64,000 nucleotides of DNA from Ostrea edulis (taxonomy: Eukaryota). How positions within the stretch are numbered: the first letter of the stretch is position 1; each line of letters starts with the position of its first letter. A program made the position numbers and the translations under genes. Positions 47,360 through 63,681 of the stretch are shown here, piece after piece. Where the stretch lies: the NCBI RefSeq assembly GCF_947568905.1, contig NC_079170.1:27342001-27406000 (forward strand). Direction: 5' to 3'. The notes under the pieces are model-generated. The model had not been told where the DNA came from. It saw only the letters and a list, made by a program, of their open reading frames with translations, and did not search any database.

Positions 47360-50300
47360 ATGGAGGGACGAACTACAGCATGTGTGATATGTGCTGCAAT
47401 AGTGATGATGACACTTCAAGATTTTTATACTTTTGCTAAAATTATGGATGTTGCGCAGTGTCCAAGATGTCTGAACAAACGTGGAGTTGTAACGTGTAAA
47501 ACTTACAAGAACAATTGTGTCAGTGTTTTCCTTAATCGTGCCAGAACCCAAATCCGTGAAATTCGCGTCCCTATGTGTACTATCGATATTGTGGTCAACA
47601 GAAAGTGGGAGTCCCTTACTGACTTTCCAGTAGTGCGGGACATTAGGGGACATCAATGTGCCAGTGTATTCAGTAAGTAGTACTTAGGGTTTTCATTATT
47701 TCAAATTAACGTGTATTTGACCACTTAATATATCATTTTTTGAACGACAAGTCGTTGTTTGTCGTTGTTGTGGTGATTTGCTAGAAGAGGAGGGGGTTTT
47801 TAACGAATGATGTATCGTGAGAAAAATAGGACCACGTGATATTTTCATAAACCAATCAAATCACTGCGTCTTTTACTATGGAATGTTTACGTTTGTACAA
47901 CTTGTGTATTGGTATTTAATTATGTAATTTAGTCTTAACTGATTCTTAGAACGTTTCTGTAAATATCAAGAACAAATTAATAACTCGTGTTTTCAGTTCT
48001 AACTGTGACTGGTATCTAAAATAAGTACTCGTATGATCGGGTTCGGGGTACATACAGGGAATGTGAAATCGGAAGTTTGAAACGTTCCCTTTGTTAGAGG
48101 GTGTACAGTGAAACTGAAAGTAAACATTTTGTTTTTGTTGTAGATCCCCTAAAAAAAAATAATCACCGCTCCTTTTAAAAATGTATTGCAGATATGCCTA
48201 CTGAAGAGTCCAAGATGTTGGCCACCACTACAATACCATCCACTTCATCAGCAAATACACAAGGGAGGGCTTGGATTGGGCCAGCGTCATTGAAAAGTAC
48301 AACTCAAGGTAGGACTGCATTTGTTGAACTAGGTTGACTTGGTAGTTTTACACAATTTAACAAGAGTATAATTCAGAAATATTATTGAAAGATTAAAAAG
48401 CAAAGTAGTATTTTTTTCTTACCAGGAAAAAAACCCCCAAAATAGTCACCACCTCTGTGTAAAAAAAAAATGTATTGCAGATATGCCTACTGAAGAGTCC
48501 AAGATGTTGGCCATCTTTACAGTGCCATCCACTTCATCAGCAAATACACAAGGGAGGGCTTGGATTGGGCCAGCGTCATTGAAAAGTAAAACTCGAGGTA
48601 GGACTGCTTTAACGTTATATATCCCTCAGCAAGGCGGGGTAACTCATACATATATAAGATAATGATGAAATTAAAAAAAAAATGTTTTCTATTATGTTCT
48701 GATTGAATGATTATCAATTATCCACCAGAATACATATCTATATCAACTGCGAATCTTGATCAACATATAAATTGATAATGGAAAAGAGCATTTTCAATTT
48801 CTGACACCTGAGGGATGGATAACCTTAATTGAACTAGGTTGACTCAGTAGTTTTACACAACAATTTAACAAGAGTATAATTCAGAAATATTATTGAAAGA
48901 TTAAAAAGCAAAGTAGTATTTTTCTTACCAGGAAAAAAAAACCCAAAATAGTCACCACCTCTGTGTAAAAAAAAAATATATTGCAGATATGCCTACTGAA
49001 GAGTCCAAGATGTTGGCCACTTCTACAATACCATCCACTTCATCAGCAAGAACACAAGGGAGGGCTTGGATTAGGCCAGCGTCATTGAAAAGTACAACTC
49101 AAGGTAGGACTGCATTTGTTGAACTAGGTTGACTTGGTAGTTTTACACAATTTAACAAGAGTATAATTCAGAAATATTATTGAAAGATTAAAAAGCAAAG
49201 TAGTATTTTTTTCTTACCAGGAAAAAAACCCCCAAAATAGTCACCACCTCTGTGTAAAAAAAAAATGTATTGCAGATATGCCTACTGAAGAGTCCAAGAT
49301 GTTGGTCATCTTTACAGTGCCATCCACTTCATCAGCAAATACACAAGGGAGGGCTTGGATTGGGCCAGCGTCATTGAAAAGTAAAACTCAAGGTAGGACT
49401 GCTTTAACGTTATATATCCCTCAGCAAGGCGGGGTAACTCATACATATATAAGATAATGATGAAATTAAAAAAAAAAAATGTTTTCTATTATGTTCTGAT
49501 TGAATGATTATCAATTATCCACCAGAATACATATCTATATCAACTGCGAATCTTGATCAACATATAAATTGATAATGGAAAAGAGCATTTTCAATTTCTG
49601 ACACCTGAGGGATGGATAACCTTAATTGAACTAGGTTGACTCAGTAGTTTTACACAACAATTTAACAAGAGTATAATTCAGAAATATTATTGAAAGATTA
49701 AAAAGCAAAGTAGTATTTTTCTTACCAGGAAAAAAAACCCCCCAAAATAGTCACCACCTCTGTGTAAAAAAAAAAAATGTATTGCAGATATGCCTACTGA
49801 AGAGTCCAAGATGTTGGCCACTTCTACAATACCATCCACTTCATCAGCAAGAACACAAGGGAGGGCTTGGATTGGGCCAGCGTCATTGAAAAGTACAACT
49901 CGAGGTAGGACTGCTTTTGTTGAAAAATGTTAATAAATAGATATCATACATGTTAAGCCAATTTCAATTTCTTTTAGAAATGAATTGTAAAGCTTTATTG
50001 TTAAATTCTTGTGTAGACATGCAAATTCTTTGTTGAGACTATTACGATTATCACAATTATGATTTTTGGGCTAATGTTTTGTGTTTTTAAATTCCAGGGT
50101 TACAATTATCTACCGAAGAATTTGACGTGCCTGGGACCGCAGGTCAGTTTGAAACCCTACTGATGTTAATTATCCATGAGAATGAACTGAACAGATTTTT
50201 TTTTTTTGATAATTACTTGTTGTATTTGTATGTTGTGTTTGATGCATTGATGAAAGTGTTAATTGTAATTACTTGTTCTAACTTTTAATAGGTGTTTTTG

Positions 50301-50632
50301 CCTGGGCAGTTGTCACAACACTTGCCATTATTCTGATTGTGATAAGGCATCTTTTGCTTTCGAAAATAAAATGCTGCTGTAGAAGGCAAGTCAACCATCT
50401 TCCTAGAACACCATCACCACCTTCAACACCGTGCACTCGTGAAACTGTAGAGCAGATAAGAATGCATTTATTGCACACACCATCTTCCATTGCTACCACC
50501 CCCAGCAGTTTATCGGCGTCAACCCCCAACACAGTAGTTTCAGTAACTCGACCTCTCCTTGGTGATGATGACGATGAACCTATTTCACAACGTACCAGGG
50601 CTAAAAGTGTCGCAAAGAGACTTAGCCTGTAA
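47360..50632 (+). CDS. Type I membrane mucin-like glycoprotein, 8 exons, 427 aa, within the Polinton left arm
   Basis: Exons 47360-47672, 48192-48308, 48481-48597, 48987-49103, 49276-49392, 49788-49904, 50098-50142, 50292-50632 (1284 nt, all phase 1). Signal-like MEGRTTACVICAAIVMMTLQDFYTFA, a 6-Cys ectodomain, five S/T-rich 39-aa repeats, TM segment GVFAWAVVTTLAIILIVI, juxtamembrane KCCCRR. Confidence 0.75.
48160..49920 (+). repeat. Higher-order exon-intron cassette repeat (A-B-A-B-A)
   Basis: Exon starts are spaced 289/506/289/512 bp, and A and B exon variants alternate. Confidence 0.95.
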
Positions 50633-51805
50633 TTTCTTTACTAGTTTTTCAAAGGGATGATATTACTACGTTTTGAACTTTTTAATGACTGTGTAGTGTA
50701 CAAGTTTTGAAAATGATAACAGTAAACAGTTTTATGAATGTGTAATCAGTTTAAAGTTGTGCATTTTTTATGACAGATTTTTTTGGAATTGGAAAAAGCA
50801 TAAAGTTTGGGACTTTTTGAACTGTTTAAGTTCCATTATTTTTCCTTTTTTTACAAAACAGATTTGTTAATGACAACAATTTGATGACATTTTACTTTTT
50901 TTAATGAATGTACATGTAGTACAGAGCAACGGTATTGTTTAAGGACATTGACTCGTTAGTTTTTCCTATGGTTGCTTTTAATGTTTTTGTATTTTTTATT
51001 TTTTTTTTTATTTTATGCGACAGTTTGTATTTTACTTGAATACTGATCAAAGGAAAATTTAAAGTCCTGCCTTTATTTGCTGATTATTATAATTTACATA
51101 TGACAGTGATCATTTGGTTATTTTTGGGATGTGCAATTGATGTAAAATGATGTTTAAGTTGATTTTAACTGATAAATGTGATTTACACTTAACATTGATC
51201 ATTTGCTTATTATGATTGTGATGTATAAGTTATGACATTAGGGTTAATTGTTGCAGCACATATTTCTATATAATAATATTTAATATCCAATAGTTATAGA
51301 GTATTATGCTTAATATTATCTACCTGTGATATAATGCTGTTAATAACAATGCAGGTTTTAAATATTTTTGAACATTTGTTTAGCTAGAAATTCTTTTGGT
51401 TAGCAACTGGGTTTAAAGAATAAGTTTGCACAGTTTGATATTAAGCATGTTAATGTCTATTTATAGATATTTTTGTCAATAAGCCAGTATATTTCTTAAC
51501 ATTGTTTTTACCTAATGTCATTTCTTTGAAAATTTGTTAAGTATTAGGAAATACTTAAAATTTTTGTTACAGGATTTTTGTTAATAAAAAAGTATTCTTT
51601 CTATATTGCCTTCTATATTTTATTAATGTACCCAAGTTCGAAATGGATATTCCGATAATTGTGACATTACGCTGCTGTCTGTAAAAATAATGTTTTACTG
51701 GTTTTTCAATTTCATTTAACAAATAACTAGCCATGTTTATTAATATACCTTTTGTCCTTTGACATGGATATAAATTTATATATATATTTTTTTTGTAATT
51801 AAGAG

Positions 51806-54800
51806 ATGGCAGACAGCGGTTTATTAAAAGAAATCCTGGACTCCTTGAATGACCCAGACACCGTGCAGTTGTTTGCTACAGTTAATGGTCTTACTGGTGA
51901 TGCCGAGGTCGAGAACAGATTAAGGGAGCTCCAGTGGGAAAAGCACATCGATGACTTATGGCAGGAGGTTCTTTCCGAGATGGAATCCCCAACTAAAAAA
52001 ATTAGACCATCCCAAGAGGATGGCGATCAACCCTCTACGAGTGGGCAGTCGGGGGGTGGGGGGAGTTCCGAGGACCCATTAGAAAAACCCTATTTCATTT
52101 GGAAGAGAGACACTCGAACATTTAAGAAAAACTTGGCCCGCGACACCACGTTTAAGGTCAAATTTAACGAGCAGTGGAAGGGGGATAAATTGTTAGATAT
52201 ACATAACAAGTTGCACGATATGTTCGACGACCTGTTGTCAGAGGCCCGGGGTCACGATGCGGATCTGGGAAGGGTGGTCATCAGTCATTCGAGTTTAAAC
52301 AATCCGATCGTCGTGCCGCTACAATCCTGGGAAAATCTGAATGCAGATGTCGTCCTGTCCGAGATCACCAAAGTACTTAATTCGAACGAAAGCTTGTCCG
52401 TGGACGAAAATCTGTTGATCACCATAGGGTCCATCGATTTGCCCAAAGGGGGAGGTAACCCTAGAAAATTACCCATCACGTCTCTCTTTGGTCCTAAAAA
52501 TAGCGTAGAAAGAAAGAGATCGCTTTTTCACGTACAAAATGATAACAACGTATGTATGGCCATTTCCATTGGTCTCTGTTACCTGAAAACGTGTGAAAAA
52601 GTAGATGCTGTTACGTGGACAAATTTAGTGGGGAAAGATGCCGGAACAATGTTCGACCATATCATCAAGCACCGTACTGTTACTCGATCCTATTACAACA
52701 ATATCTTGAAAACCTCGAGAAAAAAAATGCAAACGGAGTTGGCGATGTGGCTGTGTGAAAGAGCCGGAGTTCCTACTGACAGATATTTAGGTTTGAACGA
52801 CATCGAACCATTCGAAACCTTACTTGGTGTCTGTATCAACGTTGTGTCCTCAAGAGTAGGGAATAAATTTGTCAGGGTGACGGAGGACGAGGACAAGCCA
52901 CGTCTGTATTTATATCACGTGGACACAGAAACTGAAAAACACTGGCACGGGATTGCCAGCATACAAGGCTTTTTTAAGGCATCGTATTTTTGCCATACTT
53001 GTTTAAAACCGTATAATGATAAATCCAAACACACGTGTACCACCTCGTGTGAGGTTTGCTTACATGACCACTGTCCAGAAACAAATGTCCAAATAGGTTG
53101 TCGAACCTGTGGACGGGTCTGTCGTTCCGTGGCGTGTTTTAAACGTCATAAAAAACAAAGAGTCGTCAAGAAAGAGAGTTATCCTCCTCCTTGCGAACTG
53201 TTTCACCAATGTAAAAAATGTAGGGTCATTCTACATTGCTGTAAACGCTCTCCCGACTTGCACGTTTGTCAAGAATGGCAGTGCCCTAACTGTCTAGAAT
53301 ATCAAATAGGAGAACATCATTGTTATCAAAAACCGTGTGGATGTGATTTAGAAAAAAGAGACAAAAAATTTATTTTCTACGATTTTGAGACGCGTCAAGA
53401 GGACATCTTTCATTGCGAGCAAGGGTATCGACCGTCTTGCATCAGATGCGACCAATGTGTCAAAAAAGAACGCCAGTGTGTAGACTGTAGACTCTGTCAG
53501 AACTGTCGTGATCCGTCCTGTGGTCTACAACAACACAAAGTCAACTTTGCCGTGCTGCAGACCACCTGTCACATATGTGAGAAAAGGGAACTGGTGGAGG
53601 GCGCCTCCTGTAATTACTGCGGAACACGGTGTGAGCAATGCTCCCGAACCCATAAAGGTGAATATGTGAACCCCCCTTGTCCCGACACTTGTGGAAAAAG
53701 GGAAGTGGTGTTTTCTGGCGACAACGCCGCCGAGCAGTTCTGTGCTTTCGTCACCAGTGAACATTGTAAAAATTCGATCTTGATTGCCCACAATGCCAAA
53801 AGTTTCGACTTGTATCCGGTTTTAGAAGTGCTCATAGACCGTCACTCTATTCGACCTAGCAAGATCATTTACAACGGTTCTAAAATCATGTACATGCACA
53901 TTGCGCACAAATTAAATTTGACTTTTGTGGATTCCCTCAATTTCCTGCCCATGAAGCTTGCCAAAATACCAGATGCCTTCGGTCTACAGGAACTCTGTAA
54001 GGGATACTTTCCCCATTTATTTAATACTAAAGCCAATCAAAACTACGTGGGGCCGTATCCAAAGTTGAAGTACTACGGATACGATTTCATGTCGGCCGGG
54101 GAGCGGAAAAAGCTTGCCGAATGGCATGCAACGAAACGAGACGAAACCTTTAACTTTCGAGAAGAAATGTTGCAATATTGTCGCTCGGACGTTGATATAT
54201 TGAGGCGGGGGTGTCTAGAATTTAGAAACTTGGTGATCAAGGTGACAACTCTAACAGAGGAAACGGTTCAAGCAAACGGAATCATCAAGAAAACGAGCTC
54301 GGGTGGAGTCGACCCCTTTGATTTTGTCACCATTGCAAGTGTCTGCATGGGGATATTCAAGTCGCTCTTTTTGAAGGGAAAAAGTAAAATAGAAATCACC
54401 AAAGATGGTGAATCGGATTTGTACGACATTCGTCATCATAAGAGTTTAGAGGGGGTCCATCTCGGTGATTCTTGGACGTCTCTCGTCGATTTAAGAAAGG
54501 ACGACAATGTACAGATAGGAAAACGACATTTCAAAAGTCCCGTGGCAGTAGTACCATCTCAAGGATACACGAAGCGCGACAATTACAGCAAAATTTCCAT
54601 CCAGTGGCTGGAGTGGTTGATGGAAAAAAGTCGTCAGCGGGGTAACCCCATTGTCATTTCCCACGCTCTCAACGGTGGTGAATTCCAAGTGCCAGGGACC
54701 AATTACAGATGTGACGGGTTTGTCAAGATTCCTGGCGGAAACGGAACCATTTATGAATTCTATGGTAAGAGCTTATTATTTTAACCTTTGCCCCCCCCGT

Positions 54801-56500
54801 TTTCCCCCTAAACTGGAGGGGGGGGGGGGGCGGCGGCGGCGGCGTACCTGGACTTAATTACGAATGTATTGAGGATTGATATTGTTCATTTTGGTACAGG
54901 TTGTGTATTCCACGGTTGTCCCAACTGTTTCCCAGACGATAGGAATACCATCAAACACCCGTCTACCAATCAGACCATCAAAGAATTGTACGACATGACC
55001 AAACACAGAGAAAAGGAATTGAAAAATCTGGGATACAAATTGGTCATTGTGTGGGAGCATCAATTTAAATTTCAATTGGAGAAGAATGTAGCTTTGCAAC
55101 AATTCGTGTCCACCCTAGATCTCCAAGACAGACTCGACCCACGTGACAGTTTTTTCGGTGGTCGCACCAATGCCATCAAACTGCATTATAAAGCTGCAGA
55201 AGACGAAACAATCCAATATTTCGATTTTACCAGTCTCTATCCCTGGACCAACAAGTATTGTCGGTATCCCGTCGGCCATCCGACCATCATAACGGACGAT
55301 TTTCAGGACTTGTCGCAATATTTTGGACTGGCTAAAATAAAAATTCTCCCCCCTAGAAAACTTTATCATCCCGTACTTCCATACAATTCGAATGGAAAAT
55401 TGAAGTTCCCACTTTGTAAAACGTGTGCAGACAGTGAAAATCAAAATGAATGTACATGCTCTGTTGAAGAGAGATCCATCACGGGCACGTGGTGTACTCC
55501 TGAAATTCAAATGGCAACGTCAAAAGGGTACGAAATCTTGAAAATCTATGAAGTTTATCATTTTGCCGAGTCTTCCAAATACGATGTCGAGTCGTGTGAG
55601 GGGGGATTATTCGCTCAGTATGTGAACATGTTTTTAAAAATAAAACAGGAGGCTTCCGGATTTCCGGCCGAATGCGACACGGAAGAGACCAAAAGAAAAT
55701 ACATTAGGGAATACAAAGAAAACGAAGGTATCCAATTAGAGTATGAAAAAATTAAAAAAAATCCCGGTTTGCGATGTTTAGCGAAACTTTGTCTGAATAG
55801 CTTTTGGGGGAAATTTGGTCAGAGGTTGGGCATGCAACAATCCGTGTTCATTCACGAATCGGAAGCCGAAAATTTTTTTCAAATGCTCTCAGATCCTACA
55901 AAAGTACCACACAACTTTCACATTGTTTCGAGAGACATTCTTCAATTAGAATGGAGTAACAACCCCCTATTCGCGTCATTCGACAATAAAACTAATATAT
56001 TCTTGGCCTCTTTTACCACCATGTGGGCTCGACTGAAATTGTATGGCGTTCTCGACAAATTAAACGAGAACGTCTTGTATTTCGATACAGACAGTGTCAT
56101 CTTCAAGACAAAAAAGTCGGACAACTTGAATTATCTCCCCATAGGTAATCACCTGGGAGAATTGACTAATGAAATCTCTCCACAAGACGGGTACATTGTC
56201 GAATTCGTTTCTGGGGGTCCTAAAAACTACGCTTACCGCACACTGTCGGGAAAAGAAGAATGCAAAGTTAGAGGGTTTACACTTAACTGGGCCAACTCGA
56301 AACTTATCAATTTCCAGGCTATCAAGTCGATAATCTGTACCTCACACGACCGACAAATTGAAATTGTCAACCCTTGTAAAATATCGAGAGACAGCAGAAA
56401 GCGAAAATTGTTAAATAGGGTTGAAACTAAAAATTATAAGATGGTTTACACTAAAAGGAGAATTCTTCCTAATTTAGACACGTTGCCATTTGGATTTTGA
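51806..56500 (+). CDS. polB: Protein-primed family B DNA polymerase (pPolB), spliced, 1519 aa
   Basis: Exons 51806-54764 and 54900-56500. Exo I FYDFET, Exo II HNAKSFD, Exo III YCRSDV; Pol motifs YFDFTSLYP, KLCLNSFWGKFGQ, YFDTDS. Splicing restores YEFYGCVFHGC. Confidence 0.93.
54765..54899 (+). other. 135-bp spliceosomal intron in polB
   Basis: G|GTAAGA ... TTTTGGTACAG|GT; in-frame TAA at 54782-54784 unless spliced. Confidence 0.85.
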
Positions 56501-56596
56501 TTATAAAACGAAATATTTTGACGTTTTTGTTTTTTTTATTGAATGATAAATACACAAATAAAATGATAAAAGACATTATTCGTTGTTATTACACTG

Positions 56597-56866
56597 TCAA
56601 TATGTGAGCCAGGGTACGTTTTTCTTCTTCCGCCGAACATTGGAAATTCCAGGAGGTTTCCCAACCTTCATCTTCTTAGCGACGTAACCTGTTCCAGTTT
56701 GTAACAAATTAGTTTTATCCACTAAGTCACTGGCAGTTTGTTCTTGACCTTCTGAGGATTGCTTCGAAGTTCGGTCGACTTCTCGGGATGACGTATCAGC
56801 AGGTTCTAATTTTTGAAGTAAACGTTCATATTTCAGTTTCGGTACAAGTATCATTTCCTTTGCCAT
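56597..56866 (-). CDS. Small Polinton protein (89 aa, basic C-terminus, QTGTG motif)
   Basis: ORF overlaps the upstream ORF end and sits within the compact structural-gene block. Confidence 0.7.
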   Translation of the reverse strand: MAKEMILVPKLKYERLLQKLEPADTSSREVDRTSKQSSEGQEQTASDLVDKTNLLQTGTGYVAKKMKVGKPPGISNVRRKKKNVPWLTY

Positions 56867-57180
56867 TTTCCTTTGAAATGTTGAACAATGGGTTTAAGTA
56901 GAAGCGGCACTAAAGGAATGTTTTTCAATAGTATGCGACGTTTCTCTCGGTTGCTGACTTCTCTGGACCCCAAGGATCGAATGCATGATTCATAAGGTTT
57001 CAGTTGGTTTATATACTTTTTAGTCAGAGGATAAGTTCCGGTGTAAATGTTAAGTGCTATTTCACTGAGCACATCGTACTGTTCACTGTTCAAGGCTTTA
57101 ACGATTACTTTTTGCTGGGCATTGTCTGCACAGACAAGAAACTTTAAAAAAGCCTCGTGTTTCTTCACCGTTTGCTTCAT
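56851..57180 (-). CDS. Small conserved-type Polinton protein downstream of the ATPase (109 aa from ATG 57180)
   Basis: MKQTVKKHEAFLKFL...LSEIALNIYTG..PL...KRRIL...PLVPLLLKP. Position and pattern are typical of the small ORF next to Maverick ATPases (recalled). Confidence 0.7.
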   Translation of the reverse strand: MKQTVKKHEAFLKFLVCADNAQQKVIVKALNSEQYDVLSEIALNIYTGTYPLTKKYINQLKPYESCIRSLGSREVSNREKRRILLKNIPLVPLLLKPIVQHFKGKWQRK

Positions 57181-57218
57181 CTTTGAATAATGAGGCGAAC
57201 ACATCAAATCATACTTAT

Positions 57219-57902
57219 TTATAGAGGTTGGTAAATAATCATCTCTTCTCCCGGAAGAATGCGTGTTCTTAACTGATACTCTCTGTTCTGTGTAGGTTCC
57301 AGGCAAACATGTAAGTAACCGAAATTGGGTCGAGTCGCAGATTCATAGGCTGCTTTGAAAAAAGGAACTTGTCCTGGTAAGATCTGAGATCCAAAGGTGA
57401 TGATCTGTCGGGAATCGCGGTAATTCTTAAACAAAATGACATTAAGACAATTCAGTGAAATGGTCCTGGCGTATTTTCCCGGCGGGTATAAGTTCTGAGA
57501 CAACATCACGGTGGTCACGTTTCTATGATGAGATGTCACCGTGAATAGATGCACACAATCTTGTGATTGCGCAACTTGTAACATGAGATCATCCAGTACC
57601 ACTATAGTGTGACTGACACCCTCTGTGTACTGCTCTATGTCTTCTTTTGAAGGCATTCCTTGATGTAATGAAAGGTTTGGTATCGTCTGCTTCATTTCCT
57701 CAAACATGGGTTGATGTTCAGAATAAGCATAAATTGTTCTATCAACAGGCATAGAGAACATGCCATTGGCGTTTTGTAAAAGTGTTTTAGTAAAATGCGT
57801 TTTACCGCTTTGTGTACTTCCACATATCAGAATAGTGGAAGGTGCCGAAAACGGAAGCAAGGAACGAGTGTTCCACCAATCGTTTATGTTCTCTGTTGCC
57901 AT
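57219..57902 (-). CDS. A32/FtsK-like genome packaging ATPase
   Basis: Walker A GSTQSGKT, Walker B IVVLDDL, and SHHRN...LSQN motifs. Confidence 0.93.
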   Translation of the reverse strand: MATENINDWWNTRSLLPFSAPSTILICGSTQSGKTHFTKTLLQNANGMFSMPVDRTIYAYSEHQPMFEEMKQTIPNLSLHQGMPSKEDIEQYTEGVSHTIVVLDDLMLQVAQSQDCVHLFTVTSHHRNVTTVMLSQNLYPPGKYARTISLNCLNVILFKNYRDSRQIITFGSQILPGQVPFFKAAYESATRPNFGYLHVCLEPTQNREYQLRTRILPGEEMIIYQPL

Positions 57903-58011
57903 GTTCCTCGGTAGCCAGGCTTCCTCATACTGAAGTCCAGCGTAATGCTACGCGCACATATATATATATTAACAAACTTATTCAATGACAGTATAAAAAT
58001 AACTTCTCTAT

Positions 58012-58494
58012 CTATGTTTCATGATTAATTTTAATGACAGAATAATCATACATAAAACGTTTCACAAAATCATCATTGGATTGAATGTCTTTAGAAAATA
58101 AAGCATACACATCATTTATCGAGTTTTTGAAACACAATCTTGCAATTAAAAATACTAATACATAAAGTCCACACAAATCGGAATTACGAGGCTGTAGTCG
58201 TATAGACTTGAAATTACATTGTACACTGCTCATCCTCAAAAAGTTTTGAATGTCTTGATTGTAATGAGTTGGTGATTTCCCAAGGCTGTCGAAAAACTCT
58301 GCTTGGGATGGACTTCGCACGATTATTGCCACCCAATGTTCTCCAGGCATTGGTAAAGGTTGTGTATTGACGATGAAGGCACTCGGATACCTTGTAACGA
58401 TTTGGGGTAATGTGTTACTAGCAAATACACCTTTCACATAGCATCTTAAGCAGGGGTCCGTTTTCACCATATTTAGCAGCTGTGTCGAATTCAT
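58012..58494 (-). CDS. Adenain/Ulp1-like cysteine maturation protease
   Basis: IVNT...GEHWVA, FFDSLG and LQ.....CGLY give the His-Asp-Gln-Cys catalytic set. Confidence 0.92.
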   Translation of the reverse strand: MNSTQLLNMVKTDPCLRCYVKGVFASNTLPQIVTRYPSAFIVNTQPLPMPGEHWVAIIVRSPSQAEFFDSLGKSPTHYNQDIQNFLRMSSVQCNFKSIRLQPRNSDLCGLYVLVFLIARLCFKNSINDVYALFSKDIQSNDDFVKRFMYDYSVIKINHET

Positions 58495-59807
58495 GGTTGA
58501 ATGTAGTTGATATCACGTGATTTGTCGACTTCCAGTAGAGATGAAAAGGTAGCAAATACAATTGCGTTAGCAGCTTTAGTTGTTGCTTGTTTAAATTTCA
58601 GTTCCAGTCTGGTGTTTCCCCGACGAATCAGATTTAAATACTCTTCTCCAAATCCACAGGAATCAATAGTGAAAACAAACAGCGAATATCCACTTCCAAA
58701 ATTATCACGAGTGATGATCAGTCCGGCATCATTGTTCCATTTTCCCGAGGCTTCAAACAAACGAGCGTAAGCTGCTGAATACAGTCCCGCTGAGAAGTCT
58801 GTTTTGAGCGGTCTACCGGGTACACTTTCTCCGTTAACGTATATTCCGACGTCTGTTAACCCCATATGCTCAAAGTTAAAGGGGTTAGCGGTGTAGTCCC
58901 CATTGACGGCTTTCTGGTCCACCAAGGCCACCACGATGCGATCGGGTACCGCTTGAGGAAAAATGTTGTCCCAGTAAAACTCTGTGGATCCTTTAGGAAT
59001 AGTATTCATTTTCAATTCATTTCGCATGATAGTATACTTCACGGGGGTTGCTTCTATCTGTTTACTATGATTCAGTAGAACGCCAGGGTCTACTCGCACT
59101 TTGGCTACTTTGTACACAACGTCCAGTAACTCTAATTTGAAAGCTGGTGAAGATTCAGCCGACATAATGACAAACGGGGCACTGGATCTAAAGAGTTTGA
59201 TGTAAATGTCTACCCCGTTTATCAAATATTTATCTATATCAAAGACATCTTCCATCAGGTTTCCTTCCAACTCAAAGACTGCACTTTGCTGAGTGTATCC
59301 ATACCGCACGACCAGTCCAGCATTCCCCCCATTGTATGCATTGGCGTCACTCAGGTTTCCCTCTTCTTTAAAAAACAGCTCGGATTGTTTCTGTGAACTA
59401 AGTTCGTCTCTCCCGCTGAATAAAATTGTCTTGAAATAGGCCTTCCACGGATAGTTGTTTGTGTTGAAAGAAACTAATTTGTTGTTCAAGTAGACATCCA
59501 TCTGGGAAAACATACTTTGAAGTGGTAAATTTACAATGCCCGTTTTTTCATTTTCTGCCAGCGCCGTTCCATCTGCTTTCAAAATTCGGGCTTTCACATA
59601 CAATTTACTCCTTTTTAAATCAATGTATTCTGCCCCCGAACCAGATACTACGATTTCGATTGGTGTATCGGATACTCCTATGCTAGAAATCGGTCTTGCT
59701 TCTGTAAAGTACACTTTTTCGACCGCTACCTGATTTGTTGGAGACGCAAAAAGAGACAGTTCCATAGGTTGAGCTATGTCTTTATTATCACTGCTTAAAA
59801 AGGCCAT
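58491..59807 (-). CDS. Double jelly-roll major capsid protein (Polinton PY)
   Basis: 438 aa; ELSLF..P.Q, IEIVVSG....YIDL..SKLYVK, NPFNF.H, GYSLFVF pattern; 4-nt ATGA overlap with the protease. Confidence 0.88.
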   Translation of the reverse strand: MAFLSSDNKDIAQPMELSLFASPTNQVAVEKVYFTEARPISSIGVSDTPIEIVVSGSGAEYIDLKRSKLYVKARILKADGTALAENEKTGIVNLPLQSMFSQMDVYLNNKLVSFNTNNYPWKAYFKTILFSGRDELSSQKQSELFFKEEGNLSDANAYNGGNAGLVVRYGYTQQSAVFELEGNLMEDVFDIDKYLINGVDIYIKLFRSSAPFVIMSAESSPAFKLELLDVVYKVAKVRVDPGVLLNHSKQIEATPVKYTIMRNELKMNTIPKGSTEFYWDNIFPQAVPDRIVVALVDQKAVNGDYTANPFNFEHMGLTDVGIYVNGESVPGRPLKTDFSAGLYSAAYARLFEASGKWNNDAGLIITRDNFGSGYSLFVFTIDSCGFGEEYLNLIRRGNTRLELKFKQATTKAANAIVFATFSSLLEVDKSRDINYIQP

Positions 59808-59809
59808 TT

Positions 59810-60325
59810 CTACTGTTTAAAGATACTCCTGTAACTGTCAATCTTAAACTCTTTCTTCTTTCTCGATTGTGTTTTCTTGCCTGGTGCTCCTCGCTTTTTC
59901 TTAATTGTCTTCTGTGTCGTTTTTCCTGACTTTTTTCGTTGTTTTGCAGGCTTAGACGACTTCTTCCTTTGAGATGTTGTTCGTTTCGATTTCTTGGAAG
60001 GAATGACAGACGATTGAGAACGTGGCCTTTTTATACTCCCCTGCACCTTGACGAATGGAACACCCTCTTTGACATCCTTGGCATGTTCGATCTTAGCTCT
60101 TTCCTCCACCGCAGTCACTGGGGTCATTTGAGTGCTGGTTTGTTGTACTGATTCTAATTGTGAGTGAGGTCTCAATGGAATGACATAAGACTTATAACTT
60201 TTCACACCTCTTCCAATTTGTTTAGGCTTGTATCTATAAGGGTTGAACTTTTTCTCTGCCATGTTCTTGTAAAAGATTTCCCACATTCTGGGATCACTGA
60301 CGTAAGTTTGGCTATTCATCTTCAC
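59810..60325 (-). CDS. Basic core-like Polinton protein (about 170 aa, Lys/Arg-rich tail, QIGRG motif)
   Basis: ORF packed between minor and major capsid genes; its highly basic C-terminal half suggests DNA binding (inference). Confidence 0.75.
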   Translation of the reverse strand: MKMNSQTYVSDPRMWEIFYKNMAEKKFNPYRYKPKQIGRGVKSYKSYVIPLRPHSQLESVQQTSTQMTPVTAVEERAKIEHAKDVKEGVPFVKVQGSIKRPRSQSSVIPSKKSKRTTSQRKKSSKPAKQRKKSGKTTQKTIKKKRGAPGKKTQSRKKKEFKIDSYRSIFKQ

Positions 60326-60813
60326 AGAACGTAAGGAAACTTCTTGAAATGAAGTGTTACGGTCACCGGTCCGTCTAAGAATGACACTAAGTTTCCTTCT
60401 CTGTCTGTTATATATATGCCAATCTGCTGCAATTGGCCGATTTTTACTGGAATGTAATACGGTAGTGGGTAAGTGATATTTTCTGGTTTCTTCCCCAGGT
60501 ATATGCGTCTTAGGAGAGGTGCTTCTTTTCCACCAATAAGAGTTTCTTCACAAATATCACAACACACAAACAACTCAGATTCTTTTTTGGATGTAATCCA
60601 GCTTTCTGAGGAAAATTCTGTCAGGGCAACAGTCCAATATCCGTCGAATTGAATCTGTTTATTCAATTGAACTCGATAACAATTTGGTTTATTGTCAAAA
60701 TAATCAGAACTGTCCGTAGACGTCAACACCATCCGAACGCTCATTTTGAATGAACACATCTTGTAGAAATTAGTGACTTTTATTGCTTTTCCAGAGAGCT
60801 TTCTGGAATCCAA
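60322..60813 (-). CDS. Single jelly-roll minor capsid (penton, Polinton PX); real start likely 60744 or 60732
   Basis: L.S.DS..YF.N....YRVQL...I.FDG.W.VAL.E and C-terminal I.IYITD..G..V.F..GPV.VTLHF pattern. Confidence 0.8.
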   Translation of the reverse strand: MDSRKLSGKAIKVTNFYKMCSFKMSVRMVLTSTDSSDYFDNKPNCYRVQLNKQIQFDGYWTVALTEFSSESWITSKKESELFVCCDICEETLIGGKEAPLLRRIYLGKKPENITYPLPYYIPVKIGQLQQIGIYITDREGNLVSFLDGPVTVTLHFKKFPYVL

Positions 60814-61970
60814 GAATTGAATTTCTTAGGCCATCCTTCCCATTTTACAAATACTTCTTTGGTTTTTCCACGACGCCTCCTTTTAAGAATTTTTTCAACT
60901 CTATAGGCAACATCTTCAGACTTGACAACTTTTTGAAGCTCAGATTGGTAGAAGGTGCCTTCTATAGGATCGTCTGCCAAATCTTGTACTTTGTATACAG
61001 GTATTTGACCCCTTTTGTATCTTTTAACGACTTTGAAAAATTCTTCTGTCCATTTCTGTTGATAGTCTCTTTGAAAAGGGTGTTTAAGCTGTGATATCCT
61101 GACATTATCTCCAACTTTTAACTTGAAAAATGGTTTTACTCTTTTTTTCATTGTTTTCTTGGATGTATGCTGGTTACCATTCTTTTTTCTCAGATCCGAT
61201 TTTGGTTTTGTTCCCGCAAGATAAGCATCGAGTCTTATTTCATCAGCATTTCCCTGGTTGACAGTAAGGGGAGCATTGCCACCCAAAGATCTGTGAGGTC
61301 TGTTGTTGTAACTTTTCACCAAGTCTTGCAACACATTCACAAATCGGTAAGTTTTGTTTTTCATGAAATAGCGATACATAAGGTTCTTCATGGTACGAAT
61401 CACTCTCTCCGCATAATTTGCTTTGGTTTCATTTTGTGTGTATATCACGTTAATTCCTTCTTTTTTCAGAAACGTCTTTACCCAACGATTTTTGAATTCG
61501 CTACCTTTGTCTGTTCTAAGGGTGTGTGGTTTTCGTCCAGTTTGAAAAACTGATTTTAAACCATCGATGATGTTTTGATGATGTTTATTTGTCAAGGGGA
61601 CTATAAATAAATATCGACTAAATATGTCAATTAAAACCAATAAGAATTTGTAACCGTCGTTGTGAGATGCAATATTACTGACGTCGGCTAAGTCACCATC
61701 CCACATAGAGTCGATTGTGTTCACTATTACTTTAGAGCGCGGAAACGTCTTACGAATAGGCTTATAAAGACTATATGAGTCTTCGTTGTTTAAAAATTGT
61801 CTTATTCTCCTTCTGCCAATCTTGTATTTGCCTTCCTGTTTAACGGCTTGATACAATTTTTCGGGACCAGCAAATGCTCCCGGTTTACCGGGAGTGTAGT
61901 AGAGATCCTTCAAGTAATCCGTGTAGTTTGACATACTGCGTTCCAATGATGATCCATCTTTGATTATCAC
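60780..61970 (-). CDS. int: Retroviral-like (rve) integrase with C-terminal chromodomain; likely start 61937
   Basis: DDE triad WDGDLAD / LRTDKGSEF / AERVIRT; chromodomain YRVEKIL...VFVKWEGWPKKFNSWIP. Confidence 0.95.
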   Translation of the reverse strand: MIIKDGSSLERSMSNYTDYLKDLYYTPGKPGAFAGPEKLYQAVKQEGKYKIGRRRIRQFLNNEDSYSLYKPIRKTFPRSKVIVNTIDSMWDGDLADVSNIASHNDGYKFLLVLIDIFSRYLFIVPLTNKHHQNIIDGLKSVFQTGRKPHTLRTDKGSEFKNRWVKTFLKKEGINVIYTQNETKANYAERVIRTMKNLMYRYFMKNKTYRFVNVLQDLVKSYNNRPHRSLGGNAPLTVNQGNADEIRLDAYLAGTKPKSDLRKKNGNQHTSKKTMKKRVKPFFKLKVGDNVRISQLKHPFQRDYQQKWTEEFFKVVKRYKRGQIPVYKVQDLADDPIEGTFYQSELQKVVKSEDVAYRVEKILKRRRRGKTKEVFVKWEGWPKKFNSWIPESSLEKQ

Positions 61971-62111
61971 CTTTTATATTCAAGTAACAAACCAATTAAG
62001 ACAGGCAACTAATTACTATTCATTTTTATTAGATTTCGAATGAAAAACAAACATGTGTATATATAATTATTCTCATCATTAATTTTGAATTCAGTGTTCA
62101 TGGTCATTAGG

Positions 62112-63107
62112 TCAATCAAGATCACTCTCAATCGATTTCACGTCCTGTAAATCTCCCACATTGCATTCCTTGGACATATTGTCTTGGGCATCGTAACCGA
62201 ACGGGGTACATTCGGGACAGTCTAACATTCCAAGTTGATTTTGATGAGATTCGCTGAACATACAGAGTTCGGTGTCTTTGAGCTCTGGAACAGATTCATG
62301 CATTTCTTCAAGGGCATCTCTAAGTCTGGCTAGTTTGTTTCCGTTCAAAGTGACACCCTTCTTTGTCGGTATGGGTTCTGGGGCATCGTCGGGCTTCCAA
62401 AAGTGTCTTATATCCACTGTAGGGTAGCCGGGTGACAATGAGACGAACACGCCTCCGCCAATATGCCACTGCACTTCTCCATTCTCCTTTCCAATGTTGT
62501 CTATGTAGTCTTGGATATCTGGAAGAAGGGATTCAAATTTTAACCAACGAGCCAAAGGAAAGGTGACTCCTTTCTTTGTGGCAATGAGACGACCATGGGA
62601 TTCTGCGAGATGGCGAATGTGAACGTAAACCGTTCCCTTGTAAGGCATGACGGTGAGGAACAGGTCATTAAAGTCATCCAGACTTATCCTACATCTTGGC
62701 TCCTGAGACTGAGGGTGTGTAGCTTTCTTTGATTGGTTTCCGGAATCTCCTCTTTCTTTGGTAGGAATGACTAAAGATCTTGCCATAGCTAATTTCTTTT
62801 CGTATTCAGACTTCGTATCATCGTCATTATTCATCAAGAGTCTCGATAAATCAGCTTGATTGGCTTTCATTAAGGCCATTCGGAATCCCACAAAAGCCCT
62901 CGATCCTCGACGTAAAATGATACTAATCAGTTTTCTGCTTTGGTCGTAACTGGTTTTCTCGGCTTCTATGCGTTGCCTCATTTCGTCGGTAATTATGTTT
63001 GAAGCATACAAATGTTCCGCGACTCGAATTGCCATCATCTTCTTCACCAATATAGTGTAGTTTGCCTTAATAAGGTTTTGATGTTTATCCTCCATCTCTG
63101 TCCACAT
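62112..63107 (-). CDS. CARD (death-fold) - PC4 - PC4 - Cys/His cluster fusion protein
   Basis: N-terminal L..NYTILVK......HLYA.NIIT.EM...I.....Y.Q.RKL..II.RRG.RAF..F..AL....Q.DL..LL resembles a CARD. Two VxIRxF/H...TKKGVT PC4 motifs and a C-x5-H-x8-CxxC tail follow. Start M at 63107 or 63095. Confidence 0.8.
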   Translation of the reverse strand: MWTEMEDKHQNLIKANYTILVKKMMAIRVAEHLYASNIITDEMRQRIEAEKTSYDQSRKLISIILRRGSRAFVGFRMALMKANQADLSRLLMNNDDDTKSEYEKKLAMARSLVIPTKERGDSGNQSKKATHPQSQEPRCRISLDDFNDLFLTVMPYKGTVYVHIRHLAESHGRLIATKKGVTFPLARWLKFESLLPDIQDYIDNIGKENGEVQWHIGGGVFVSLSPGYPTVDIRHFWKPDDAPEPIPTKKGVTLNGNKLARLRDALEEMHESVPELKDTELCMFSESHQNQLGMLDCPECTPFGYDAQDNMSKECNVGDLQDVKSIESDLD

Positions 63108-63224
63108 CAAAACTCTCACAATAAAAAAAATGAAGTTAACCCGTATCCTCTCTGAGACTTGTTCAGGACTGGTGAAAATCATTCAAATCGATCAAATTTA
63201 TACATCATTTAATCACGTGGTTCG

Positions 63225-63413
63225 TGACTGTAGACTCCGCCTTGACTGTAGACTCCCCTCTGACTGTAGACTCCCCTTTGGCTATATACTCCCCTTTGGC
63301 TATATACTCCCCCATGACATCAGTGACTGTAGACTACCCTCTGACTGTAGACTACCCTCTGACTGTATACTACCCCACGACGTCAGTGACTGTAGACTTC
63401 AATTTGACTGTAG
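63225..63413 (-). repeat. Internal inverted copy of the terminal 18-bp tandem motif
   Basis: 63256-63273 is the exact reverse complement of 43573-43590 (GAGTCTACAGTCAGAGGG); about 9-10 related units. Confidence 0.9.
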
Positions 63414-63438
63414 AAAACACTGGCTGTAGATTTTGACA

Positions 63439-63681
63439 TTACAGATCTTTAACATTATGGGTTTCCAAGTTTTGTGTATGAAATTGAGTACGCATTATTT
63501 GTACATTTTTCTCCAGTATAGGATTTAAAACTTTTGATGCATGATGTATTCTTCTTTGAAAACGATATCTGTCCAAAGCCATGGTCATCCATTCCCCCTT
63601 TCGATCTTCATAGGGAATATAGATAATCGTTTTCTTGTCTGAAAATGTCACAGTCTTGCCCATAGTTTCAAGCTTTGACAA
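63439..63681 (-). CDS. PPP1R15 (GADD34)/ICP34.5/DP71L-like PP1 regulatory protein
   Basis: KTVTF RVxF motif followed by RKGEW...ALDRYRFQRRI....KVLNPIL, which is the PP1/eIF2alpha-binding signature. Confidence 0.88.
   Translation of the reverse strand: MSKLETMGKTVTFSDKKTIIYIPYEDRKGEWMTMALDRYRFQRRIHHASKVLNPILEKNVQIMRTQFHTQNLETHNVKDL

What the first reader, a model, noticed from the sequence alone, without database searches (positions are those of the whole stretch)
47360..50632. Eight-exon type I membrane mucin-like glycoprotein encoded inside a Polinton
Seen: fragments that the ORF track reports separately splice (all phase 1) into one 427-aa protein. It has a signal peptide, a 6-Cys domain starting CPRC, five 39-aa repeats about one-third Ser/Thr, an 18-aa hydrophobic TM segment, KCCCRR (palmitoylation-like) and a ~90-aa tail, followed by a long AT-rich 3' region with AATAAA before the polB promoter. 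Known: Polinton virions are regarded as non-enveloped, core genes are mostly unspliced, and nematode Mavericks have acquired a fusogen and cargo genes. Inference: a cell-surface glycan shield, receptor decoy, superinfection-exclusion factor or envelope protein. I do not recognise it as a described Polinton gene.
Basis: partly seen in the sequence, partly recalled or inferred. Interest (0 to 1): 0.82.

Follow-up and report, generated by a model that had tools for sequence, protein, structure and literature searches.

The report
Oyster Polinton carries spliced membrane glycoprotein
A virus-like transposon (Polinton) in the flat oyster genome carries a real, intron-containing gene for a mucin-like cell-surface protein that related oyster Polintons also keep in the same place; this suggests these elements deal with the host cell surface, but what the protein does is still unknown.

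Summary
Window 47360-50632 (+) reads as eight GT..AG exons, all phase 1, 1284 nt, or 427 aa. The parts are a signal-like segment, a 6-Cys head, five 39-aa Ser/Thr-rich exon cassettes, one TM segment and a ~95-aa tail.

- **Source and annotation.** The window is Ostrea edulis. RefSeq XP_055999802.1 ("mucin-2-like", 468 aa) threads onto exactly these exons, with a start 123 nt upstream.
- **Position.** The gene lies 3.96 kb inside a ~20-kb Polinton. The left terminus is identical in five O. edulis copies that have different flanks. All five carry the gene ~1.1-1.2 kb upstream of polB.
- **Conservation.** Saccostrea echinata, S. cucullata and Magallana angulata have the same arrangement, the same phase-1 introns and conserved first and last intron positions.
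- **Evolution.** Synonymous divergence of the head matches the core genes. Its protein divergence is about ten-fold higher (dN/dS ~0.23-0.32 against 0.03-0.07).
- **Relatives.** None in Pfam, by PDB sequence or by Foldseek. "Mucin-2-like" is a compositional label.

It is a resident, fast-evolving accessory gene. Its function is inferred only: most likely a host-interface protein on cells expressing the element. A virion envelope role is disfavoured because the element has no fusogen and no other membrane protein. No transcript data were available.

The parts
43396..63448 (.). Polinton/Maverick element, about 20 kb. The left end is exact; the right end is approximate.
   Evidence: Homology to four other O. 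edulis copies starts at 43394-43397 in three of them and at 43422 in L007, with different flanks in each. The gene content is typical of a Polinton. The inverted arms are shown. The outermost ~20 nt on the right have no inverted match.
43396..43645 (.). Left terminal inverted repeat, built of ~18-nt sub-repeats
   Evidence: It aligns with 63427-63210, with 173 of 244 columns identical.
44129..45825 (-). Second intron-bearing accessory gene. By my reading it has 5 exons, all phase 2, and encodes 185 aa. RefSeq models it as 162 aa at 44129-45369.
   Evidence: A 161-165-aa gene sits in the same position in L001, L002, L004, L005, L007 and L008. Identity across genera is 47-67% aa. No Pfam family matches.
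47127..47166 (+). Two TATAAA motifs upstream of the gene; a possible promoter, not tested
47237..47359 (+). In-frame upstream extension (41 codons) that the RefSeq model uses as the start; its use is unresolved
47360..47672 (+). Exon 1. It holds the signal-like hydrophobic segment (codons 1-26) and the 6-Cys head domain (from about 47438 onwards). The donor is GT and the exon ends in phase 1.
   Evidence: The head is 45-51% identical to the genomic and RefSeq-backed relatives (48-54% over codon-aligned columns), with R36, C37, G42, C46, N52, C53 and R66 invariant across the eight sequences of A1.
48177..49924 (+). DNA-level tandem array that holds the five repeat exons and their introns (795-nt higher-order unit, 289-nt sub-unit)
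   Evidence: Other copies lack exactly one 795-nt unit and so have 3 repeat exons rather than 5.
48192..48308 (+). Exon 2, Ser/Thr-rich cassette, 117 nt, phase 1-1
48481..48597 (+). Exon 3, cassette, 117 nt, phase 1-1
48987..49103 (+). Exon 4, cassette, 117 nt, phase 1-1
49276..49392 (+). Exon 5, cassette, 117 nt, phase 1-1
49788..49904 (+). Exon 6, cassette, 117 nt, phase 1-1
50098..50142 (+). Exon 7, short acidic juxtamembrane linker, 45 nt, phase 1-1
50292..50632 (+). Exon 8. It holds the TM segment (about 50294-50344, starting with the conserved [VF][FL]AW), the KCCCRR cluster, a Ser/Thr/Pro-rich tail, a conserved basic C-terminal motif and the stop codon.
50893..51598 (+). Conserved non-coding block downstream of the gene, ending at the only AATAAA (51583-51588). 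It may be the 3' UTR or a regulatory region in front of polB.
   Evidence: 82% nt identity to M. angulata L005:12983-13700. The reading frame switches along the match, which argues against coding. The block is absent from Saccostrea.
51806..56500 (+). [quoted passage not shown] It reads as two ORFs separated by one ~130-nt intron that relatives share. RefSeq models it as 1519 aa.
   Evidence: Pfam DNA_pol_B_2, E 9e-21 and 1e-24. Gene models of 1519 and 1528 aa.
57219..57902 (-). Packaging-ATPase-like ORF
   Evidence: Weak Pfam hits to Pox_A32 and FtsK, below the curated cut-offs. It is 86-90% identical across genera.
58012..58494 (-). Adenain/Ulp1-like cysteine protease
   Evidence: Peptidase_C48 and Peptidase_C5, both above the curated cut-offs
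58491..59807 (-). Major capsid protein (double jelly roll), 438 aa
   Evidence: Weak DJR-like Pfam hit. A 438-aa gene is annotated in relatives. It is 90-93% identical across genera.
60780..61970 (-). Retrovirus-like integrase with a chromodomain
   Evidence: Pfam rve at 1.4e-11 and Chromo at 8.6e-11
62112..63182 (-). CARD + PC4 domain protein next to the right end
   Evidence: Pfam CARD at 9e-13 and PC4 at 2.8e-14
63210..63427 (.). Right terminal inverted repeat (18-nt sub-repeats)

Best explanation
**What it is (shown).** It is a genuine, spliced, resident accessory gene of a Polinton lineage that lives in oyster genomes.
- It sits in the variable left arm, between the left terminal repeat and polB.
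- It encodes a protein with the layout of a type I membrane glycoprotein. In order, the parts are an N-terminal signal sequence, a ~70-aa all-beta head with six conserved cysteines, a 120-211-aa Ser/Thr-rich stalk, one TM helix, and a Pro-rich cytoplasmic tail ending in a conserved basic motif (TR-x-K ... K/R-K/R-L).
- The stalk is built from phase 1-1 exon cassettes that sit in a tandem array of exon-plus-intron units. Gain or loss of a unit changes stalk length without breaking the frame. Near-identical copies in one genome carry 3 or 5 cassettes.

**How it most likely works (inferred).**
1. Host RNA polymerase II transcribes it and the host spliceosome splices it.
2. The protein enters the ER, the head forms three disulfides, and the stalk is O-glycosylated.
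3. The protein is displayed on the surface or secretory membranes of the cell expressing the element. The head is held out on the stalk and the tail motif binds a cytosolic partner.
4. There it acts as a host-interface factor. It either binds a host or competitor ligand or sterically shields the cell surface. It is not a virion part.

My confidence is about 0.9 for the gene, its place in the element and its architecture. It is about 0.4 for the cell-surface interface role.
For: **Gene model.**
- Canonical splice sites and uniform phase 1.
- The RefSeq protein threads exactly onto these exons.

**Part of the element.**
- Five O. edulis copies on three chromosomes share the same left terminus, with different flanks.
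- Each copy carries the gene followed by polB.

**Conserved resident gene.**
- S. echinata, S. cucullata and M. angulata have the same order: a ~162-aa gene on the minus strand, then this gene, then polB.
- All introns are phase 1, and the first and last intron positions are conserved.

**Constraint with fast evolution.**
- Head domain: pS 0.62-0.68 and pN ~0.32, so dN/dS is ~0.23-0.32.
- Core genes of the same elements: pS 0.48-0.69 and dN/dS 0.03-0.07.
- Amino-acid identity across genera is 90-93% for the capsid protein, 80-91% for polB and 48-54% for the head (49% by tblastn). Exon 8 is not detectable.

**Architecture kept in all four species.**
- Exactly two hydrophobic segments per protein.
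- A stalk with 30-37% Ser+Thr made of unrelated repeats.
- A conserved start of the TM segment and a conserved C-terminal motif.

**Not a virion protein.**
- It is the only signal-plus-TM protein of the element.
- Nothing matches a fusogen.

**Precedent.** Nematode Mavericks have a TIR-proximal, poorly conserved region with intron-bearing cargo genes (bioRxiv 10.1101/2022.07.12.499685).
Against: - No transcript, protein or glycan data were available. Every database fragment I could inspect is unspliced genomic read-through of exon 1.
- The signal peptide and O-glycosylation are inferred from composition only. No predictor for either was at hand.
- The start codon is ambiguous. With the RefSeq start, the hydrophobic segment lies 47 residues in.
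- The head domain has no recognisable relatives or fold, so the function rests on architecture and evolutionary pattern alone.
- The structure models are weak. The first had pLDDT 52. In the second, only one of five models reached 73.5.
- The copies within one species are too alike (0-0.9% variable sites) for a selection test.
- dS between genera is near saturation, so the dN/dS values are rough.
- The juxtamembrane Cys cluster is absent from Saccostrea.
Confidence: 0.5

Rival explanations
1. It is a virion component. The oyster Polinton makes particles that carry a membrane, and this protein is the attachment or envelope glycoprotein, with the conserved tail motif contacting the capsid.
For: - It has a type I layout with an exposed head on a glycosylated stalk.
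- A short motif at the end of an otherwise free-running tail is conserved, which fits a fixed, possibly element-encoded partner.
- It evolves fast while the capsid is conserved.
- Nematode Mavericks carry a membrane fusogen.
Against: - The element has no fusogen-like or other membrane protein.
- The ectodomain has only ~70 structured residues and matches nothing in PDB by sequence or fold.
- The capsid module is of the adenovirus/virophage type, which from general knowledge is non-enveloped.
- A seven-intron gene in the cargo-like arm looks more like an accessory gene than a structural one.
Confidence: 0.12
2. It is passive or host-serving cargo: an animal-type gene picked up by the element and carried along. 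It does nothing for the element, and it may be neutral or useful to the oyster.
For: - It is intron-rich with symmetric phase 1-1 exons, which from general knowledge is the style of metazoan extracellular proteins.
- It lies in the TIR-proximal arm, where nematode Mavericks hold host-derived cargo.
- It evolves much faster than the core genes.
Against: - A search with exon 1 (signal segment plus head) against 1.84 billion representative proteins found no host progenitor or paralogue outside Polintons.
- The same gene is kept in the same place in three genera. Its synonymous divergence is as deep as that of the core genes, so it has travelled with the element throughout.
- The head is under purifying selection.
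Confidence: 0.2
3. It is not a working gene. It is an open frame stitched by gene predictors across a minisatellite-like array, or a decaying pseudogene.
For: - The repeat exons differ mostly by non-synonymous changes, and they diverge about as much as their introns do.
- No spliced transcript was seen.
Against: - The frame, the splice sites and the phase are intact in all five O. edulis copies and in three other species.
- The six Cys, the start of the TM segment and the C-terminal motif are conserved.
- pN is well below pS in the head.
Confidence: 0.03

Closest known systems
Cargo region of nematode Mavericks (Widen et al., bioRxiv 10.1101/2022.07.12.499685)
   Same: Both have a few kb next to a terminal repeat that hold intron-bearing genes. 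In both, this region is far less conserved than the intron-poor core genes.
   Different: - In nematodes the cargo (proteases, kinases) varies between elements and is swapped between species. Here the same two genes are kept in order across three oyster genera and diverge in step with the core.
- The region lies between the left repeat and polB, not between the repeat and the integrase.
MFUS-1, the glycoprotein-B-like fusogen of nematode Mavericks
   Same: Both are Maverick-borne proteins with a signal peptide and a single TM segment.
   Different: - MFUS-1 is 866 aa, and its predicted ectodomain resembles a class III fusogen.
- This protein has a ~70-aa head on a low-complexity stalk and no PDB match by sequence or fold.
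- It is not a homologue and not a plausible fusogen.
Adenovirus E3 type I membrane glycoproteins (from general knowledge)
   Same: Both are non-core, fast-evolving, lineage-specific type I membrane glycoproteins. Both are encoded by a capsid-only DNA virus relative that also has an adenain-type protease. E3 proteins act on the infected cell's surface and not in the virion.
   Different: No sequence or family relation was found; Pfam returned no E3 family. The likeness is in role and genome logic only, and it is untested.
Mucin-like glycoproteins and mucin-like domains of enveloped animal viruses, and host sialomucins (from general knowledge)
   Same: All have a Ser/Thr-rich repeat stalk whose repeats turn over quickly while its composition is kept. 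All are membrane-anchored and show length polymorphism.
   Different: - Ser+Thr at 30-37% is modest for a mucin domain.
- No glycan data exist.
- The stalk here is assembled from whole exon cassettes, not from repeats inside one exon.
Mucin-2, the name RefSeq gives
   Same: Only the Ser/Thr-rich repetitive composition is shared.
   Different: Pfam finds no family or domain of any kind in the protein, so none of the domains that define gel-forming mucins. The protein is membrane-anchored and 427-468 aa long.

Membership tests
Polinton/Maverick (the surrounding element) | [quoted passage not shown] | tested here: met
   Pfam DNA_pol_B_2, E 9e-21 and 1.4e-24, on the two ORFs of 51806-56500
Polinton/Maverick (the surrounding element) | Retrovirus-like (rve) integrase | tested here: met
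   rve at 1.4e-11 plus Chromo at 8.6e-11, at 60780-61970
Polinton/Maverick (the surrounding element) | Capsid morphogenesis module: double-jelly-roll capsid protein, packaging ATPase and adenain-like protease | tested here: met
   The protease scores above the Pfam cut-offs. The DJR and ATPase hits are weak, but these ORFs are 86-93% conserved across genera.
Polinton/Maverick (the surrounding element) | Terminal inverted repeats and multiple insertions with the same ends | tested here: met
   Inverted arms at 43417-43645 and 63427-63210, ~71% identical. The left terminus is identical in five copies with different flanks. The target-site duplication and the exact right end were not resolved.
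Type I membrane mucin-like glycoprotein (an architectural class) | N-terminal signal peptide | tested here: inconclusive
The Saccostrea model has it at 7-25. No signal-peptide predictor was available, and the RefSeq start would place the segment at 47-64.
Type I membrane mucin-like glycoprotein (an architectural class) | A single TM segment near the C-terminus with a cytoplasmic tail | tested here: met
   There is one strong hydrophobic segment in exon 8. Each of the four species' proteins has exactly two hydrophobic segments.
Type I membrane mucin-like glycoprotein (an architectural class) | Ser/Thr(/Pro)-rich tandem repeats in the ectodomain | tested here: met
   Five 39-aa cassettes at 29-37% Ser+Thr. 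The stalks of relatives are at 30-37% and are built of unrelated repeats.
Type I membrane mucin-like glycoprotein (an architectural class) | Dense O-glycosylation | not testable with these tools
   This needs glycoproteomic data.
Gel-forming mucins (MUC2), the RefSeq name | VWD/C8/TIL assemblies and a C-terminal cystine knot | tested here: not met
   Pfam scans of P0028, P0005, P0011 and of the head, run up to E = 10, gave no such family.
Ly6/uPAR three-finger domains (considered for the head) | A match to the family profile or fold, with 8-10 Cys including the C-terminal Cys cluster | tested here: not met
   There is no Pfam hit, no PDB sequence hit and no Foldseek hit better than E = 2.4. 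The head has only six Cys.
Class III viral fusogens (MFUS-1 / glycoprotein B type) | A large ectodomain with fusion loops and a central coiled coil | tested here: not met
   Only ~70 residues of the ectodomain are structured, and there are no sequence or fold matches.
Maverick cargo genes in the sense of Widen et al. | TIR-proximal, intron-bearing and poorly conserved relative to the core | tested here: met
Maverick cargo genes in the sense of Widen et al. | Variable between related elements, or recently taken from the host | tested here: not met
   The same gene sits in the same place in three genera, with synonymous divergence equal to the core. No host paralogue was found.

The most novel reading that the evidence does not exclude
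The glycoprotein is the surface or attachment protein of a membrane-bearing particle made by an oyster Polinton lineage. Its fast-changing head and cassette-length stalk would then track the host cell surface. That would be the first such protein in a Polinton outside nematodes, and of a different kind from the nematode fusogen.
Probability: 0.12. Interest if true: 0.85.

Novelty: new variant of a known kind. Interest (0 to 1): 0.6.

Why it matters
- **Biology of Polintons.** They are usually pictured as a polymerase, an integrase and a naked capsid. Here a lineage has kept an intron-rich, fast-evolving surface glycoprotein beside polB for as long as its core genes have been diverging between oyster genera. 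That points to a standing interaction between the element and the host cell surface or secretory pathway. It also offers a concrete gene through which that interaction could be studied descriptively in animals whose genomes are crowded with such elements.
- **Mechanism of variation.** Whole exon-plus-intron cassettes in phase 1-1 act as units of stalk-length change.
- **Annotation.** The 'mucin-2-like', 'fibrous sheath CABYR-binding protein-like' and 'rho family-interacting ... like' entries in oyster RefSeq sets are Polinton genes. They should not be counted as host mucins or immune genes.

Tried and rejected
**Searches that found nothing or little.**
- A word-index search with exon 1 found nothing in the 57-182 aa range.
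- A second word search, with a profile of the heads, added only one near-duplicate.
- Pfam on every exon and on the full RefSeq proteins gave only sub-threshold noise: TerY_C at 0.011 and RUN at 0.0011.
- A PDB sequence search with the head profile gave no hit even at E = 10.
- Rfam and ARAGORN on the element found nothing.

**Structure.**
- Two AlphaFold runs gave mean pLDDT 52 and 73.5. In the second run the other four models scored ~35.
- Foldseek against PDB and BFVD gave nothing better than E = 2.
- The three-finger (Ly6) idea for the head is therefore dropped.

**Selection tests within species.** These had no power.
- O. edulis copies differ at 0-0.9% of sites.
- The two Saccostrea loci differ by about 1%.

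**Rows and hits set aside.**
- One row (polB second block, O. edulis against M. angulata) gave an implausible 42% identity, against 88.6% by tblastn. I take it for a mis-set frame in my script and do not use it.
- The fungal TPR protein P0006 (E 6e-5, a 45-residue stretch) is treated as a chance hit.

**Transcript evidence.** I sought it among the database fragments. All of them read from exon 1 into the intron.

**Literature.** Searches for the accession numbers, and for Polinton together with mucin, glycoprotein or oyster, found no description.
Full report
**1. The observation**

Reading window 47000-51200 and checking boundaries by script gives eight plus-strand exons: 47360-47672, 48192-48308, 48481-48597, 48987-49103, 49276-49392, 49788-49904, 50098-50142 and 50292-50632.
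- Every intron is GT..AG and every junction is phase 1.
- The exons sum to 1284 nt, which is 427 codons plus a stop.
- Exon 1 holds a hydrophobic segment at residues 7-26 and then six cysteines starting CPRC.
- Exons 2-6 are 117 nt each and encode 39-aa units with 29-37% Ser+Thr.
- Exon 8 opens with a 17-18-residue hydrophobic segment, then KCCCRR, then a ~95-aa Ser/Thr/Pro-rich tail.
- The only AATAAA between the stop and the polB ATG (51806) is at 51583.

**2. The repeat exons are a DNA-level array**

A 795-nt unit (exon, 172-nt intron, exon, ~390-nt intron) occurs twice at 98% identity, and a 289-nt sub-unit recurs at about 93%. Differences between the cassette exons are mostly non-synonymous and about as frequent as in the introns. 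The cassettes are therefore young duplicates and show no sign of constraint among themselves.

**3. Source and annotation**

An HMMER search with exon 1 against 1.84 billion representative proteins gave seven hits. I ran it after the word search and Pfam had left the protein open. The hits are:
- a 100% match to an Ostrea edulis RefSeq protein (P0001, 390 aa, two loci);
- relatives in Saccostrea echinata, S. cucullata and Magallana angulata, plus short ORF calls from raw assemblies;
- one fungal protein that I take for chance.

A word search with P0001 found a cluster named 'mucin-2-like [Ostrea edulis]'. The locus fetched with P0028, L008 (OX387710.1), is identical to window 39237-58632. The gene is therefore annotated, but only by an automatic, composition-driven name.

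On the start codon, the Saccostrea model begins directly with the signal-like segment.

**4. Is it inside the Polinton?**

Pfam on the large ORFs to the right gives polB, a packaging-ATPase-like ORF, an adenain/Ulp1-like protease, a double-jelly-roll-like 438-aa protein, an rve integrase with a chromodomain, and a CARD+PC4 protein. Inverted arms built of 18-nt sub-repeats lie at 43417-43645 and 63427-63210.

The decisive test is comparison of copies.
- Four other O. edulis loci were fetched with the glycoprotein itself: L001, L006 and L007 on OX387711.1, and L002 on OX387712.1.
- They match the window at 98.8-99.8%.
- Three of them start to match at 43394-43397 and show the same terminal letters. 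The BLAST match of L007 starts at 43422, with the same terminal letters just before it. All four have unrelated flanks.
- The gene therefore starts 3.96 kb inside the left end, and the 'left end mis-assigned' escape is closed.
- The outermost ~20 nt of the right end have no inverted match, so that end is approximate.

**5. Distribution and synteny**

- In all five O. edulis copies, the gene is followed by polB on the same strand after ~1.1-1.2 kb.
- Where annotated, the gene is preceded by a ~162-aa minus-strand gene.
- The same order holds in S. cucullata and M. angulata. In S. echinata only polB is called, and tblastn finds the upstream gene's exons.
- No homologue with known context lies outside a Polinton.
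- Copies carry 5 cassettes (window, L006, L007) or 3 (L001, L002). The difference is exactly one 795-nt unit.

**6. Gene structure across genera**

Threading each RefSeq protein on its own locus gives 8, 6, 5, 5 and 4 exons, and every junction is phase 1.
- The first intron always falls just after the sixth Cys.
- The last intron always falls at the Gly codon before the conserved [VF][FL]AW that opens the TM segment.
- The middle exons are all multiples of 3 and encode Ser/Thr-rich repeats that are unrelated between genera.

**7. Evolutionary rate**

| Protein, window against Saccostrea / Magallana elements | Amino-acid identity |
|---|---|
| Capsid | 90-93% |
| ATPase | 86-90% |
| polB | 80-91% |
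| Protease | 64-81% |
| Glycoprotein head | 49% by tblastn; 48-54% over codon-aligned columns |
| Glycoprotein exon 8 | not detectable |
| Upstream spliced gene | 47-67% |

Nei-Gojobori counts:

| Region | pS | pN | dN/dS |
|---|---|---|---|
| Head | 0.62-0.68 | ~0.32 | ~0.23-0.32 |
| Capsid, ATPase, polB | 0.48-0.69 | 0.03-0.07 | 0.03-0.07 |

One row is discarded as a script error. Synonymous depth is the same in the head and the core. The gene has therefore travelled with the core and was not acquired separately in each genus. Its protein changes about ten times faster, yet it remains constrained. dS is near saturation, so the ratios are rough. Within species the copies are too alike for any test.

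**8. What the protein resembles**

By sequence or fold it resembles nothing.
- Pfam gives no family.
- A PDB sequence profile search gives nothing at E = 10.
- AlphaFold models of the head are all-beta but weak.
- Foldseek against PDB and BFVD gives nothing better than E = 2.
- A three-finger (Ly6/uPAR) reading and a fusogen reading both fail their membership tests.

Conserved features define a small family so far confined to Ostreidae:
- a signal-like segment;
- a head with Cys spacing C-x2-C-x8-C-x6/7-C-x17/19-C-x20/26-C and an IREIRV-like strand;
- a Ser/Thr-rich stalk;
- the start of the TM segment;
- a basic C-terminal motif.

**9. Interpretation**

*Shown.* This is a real-looking spliced gene that is a resident of this Polinton lineage. 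It encodes a type I membrane, mucin-like layout, evolves fast but under constraint, and has a stalk whose length changes by whole exon cassettes.

*Inferred.* It is expressed through the host secretory pathway and displayed on membranes of the cell expressing the element, where it works as a host-interface factor.
- I prefer this to a virion role because it is the only signal-plus-TM protein in the element.
- Nothing fusogen-like is present.
- It sits with another intron-rich gene in the arm that, in nematode Mavericks, holds cargo.
- The closest functional analogy, from general knowledge and untested, is the E3 set of type I membrane glycoproteins of adenoviruses.
- The conserved tail motif keeps the virion-contact reading alive at low probability.
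- A pure hitch-hiker reading is weakened by co-divergence with the core and by the lack of any host paralogue.

**10. State of the copies (counts only)**

In the window copy, each of the ATPase, protease, capsid and integrase genes reads as one ORF. polB reads as two ORFs separated by an intron of ~130 nt that the Saccostrea model shares. I saw no break.

| Copy | Length-changing indels not a multiple of 3, relative to the window's polB span | Annotated polB product |
|---|---|---|
| L001 | 3 | no polB model called |
| L006 | 6 | 1020 aa |
| L007 | 1 | 1286 aa |
| L002 | 2 | still 1519 aa, so these lie in the intron or cancel out |

The glycoprotein frame is open in all five copies.

**11. Limits and conduct**

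- **Joined query left out.** I built no joined-exon query of my own. Searches used exon 1 and the other exons by reference, or the database's own proteins returned by the tools (P0001, P0028 and others). The script only walked those database proteins along the DNA and printed coordinates.
- **How loci were fetched.** L001-L008 are oyster genome stretches fetched by look-up of the finding's own protein and its relatives. They contain parts of Polinton copies, which I only compared and described.
- **Masked and human sequence.** The N run at 34661-34791 was left alone. No contig looked human.

Noticed in passing
window 44129-45825 (-): There is a second intron-bearing gene in the left arm. By my reading it has 5 exons, all phase 2, and encodes 185 aa with a C-terminal KKKR-type basic patch. 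RefSeq models it as 162 aa. A gene of this kind is annotated upstream of the glycoprotein gene in most loci; in S. echinata, where none is called, tblastn finds its exons. It is 47-67% identical across genera and has no Pfam family.
   Followed up: partly
window 62112-63182 (-): The gene next to the right end encodes a CARD domain plus a PC4 (ssDNA-binding coactivator) domain (Pfam 9e-13 and 2.8e-14). A death-fold signalling domain in a Polinton is worth a look of its own.
   Followed up: no
window 50893-51598: A ~700-nt non-coding block after the glycoprotein stop is 82% identical to M. angulata (L005:12983-13700). The coding sequence beside it cannot be aligned at the nucleotide level, and synonymous sites of the core genes are near saturation. 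The block ends at the only AATAAA and is absent from Saccostrea. It may be a constrained 3' UTR, a regulatory block in front of polB, or a shared inserted repeat.
   Followed up: partly
window 51806-56500 (+): polB of this lineage has one ~130-nt intron, shared by the O. edulis and S. echinata gene models (1519 and 1528 aa). Core genes of Polintons are usually described as intron-free.
   Followed up: partly
L001, L002, L006, L007 against window 43396-60635: Five copies on three O. edulis chromosomes are 98.8-99.8% identical and have distinct flanks. This points to a recently amplified family, in which some copies carry indels in polB.
   Followed up: partly
window 63428-63448: The outermost ~20 nt expected at the right end have no inverted match to the left terminus. 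The right terminus and any target-site duplication were not resolved.
   Followed up: partly
window 43838-43911 (+): Just inside the left repeat there is a TATAAAA-type motif, followed ~60 nt later by a GTAAGT donor. This may be a non-coding leader exon. It was read by eye only.
   Followed up: no
window 45596-45762: A GC-rich stretch that I thought might be a tRNA-derived SINE piece, followed by (AT)30, lies inside an intron of the upstream gene. ARAGORN calls no tRNA there.
   Followed up: partly
window 39237-40425 (-) = L008:1-1189: The host gene nearest the element is annotated with Pfam L_HMGIC_fpl (LHFPL-like tetraspan). It lies about 3 kb left of the element's left end.
   Followed up: no
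RefSeq names of P0005, P0011, P0025, P0027 and P0028: The automatic names ('mucin-2-like', 'fibrous sheath CABYR-binding protein-like', 'rho family-interacting cell polarization regulator 1-like') all belong to this one Polinton gene family. They reflect low-complexity composition only.
   Followed up: yes
window 34661-34791: A run of 131 N, left as it is.
   Followed up: no
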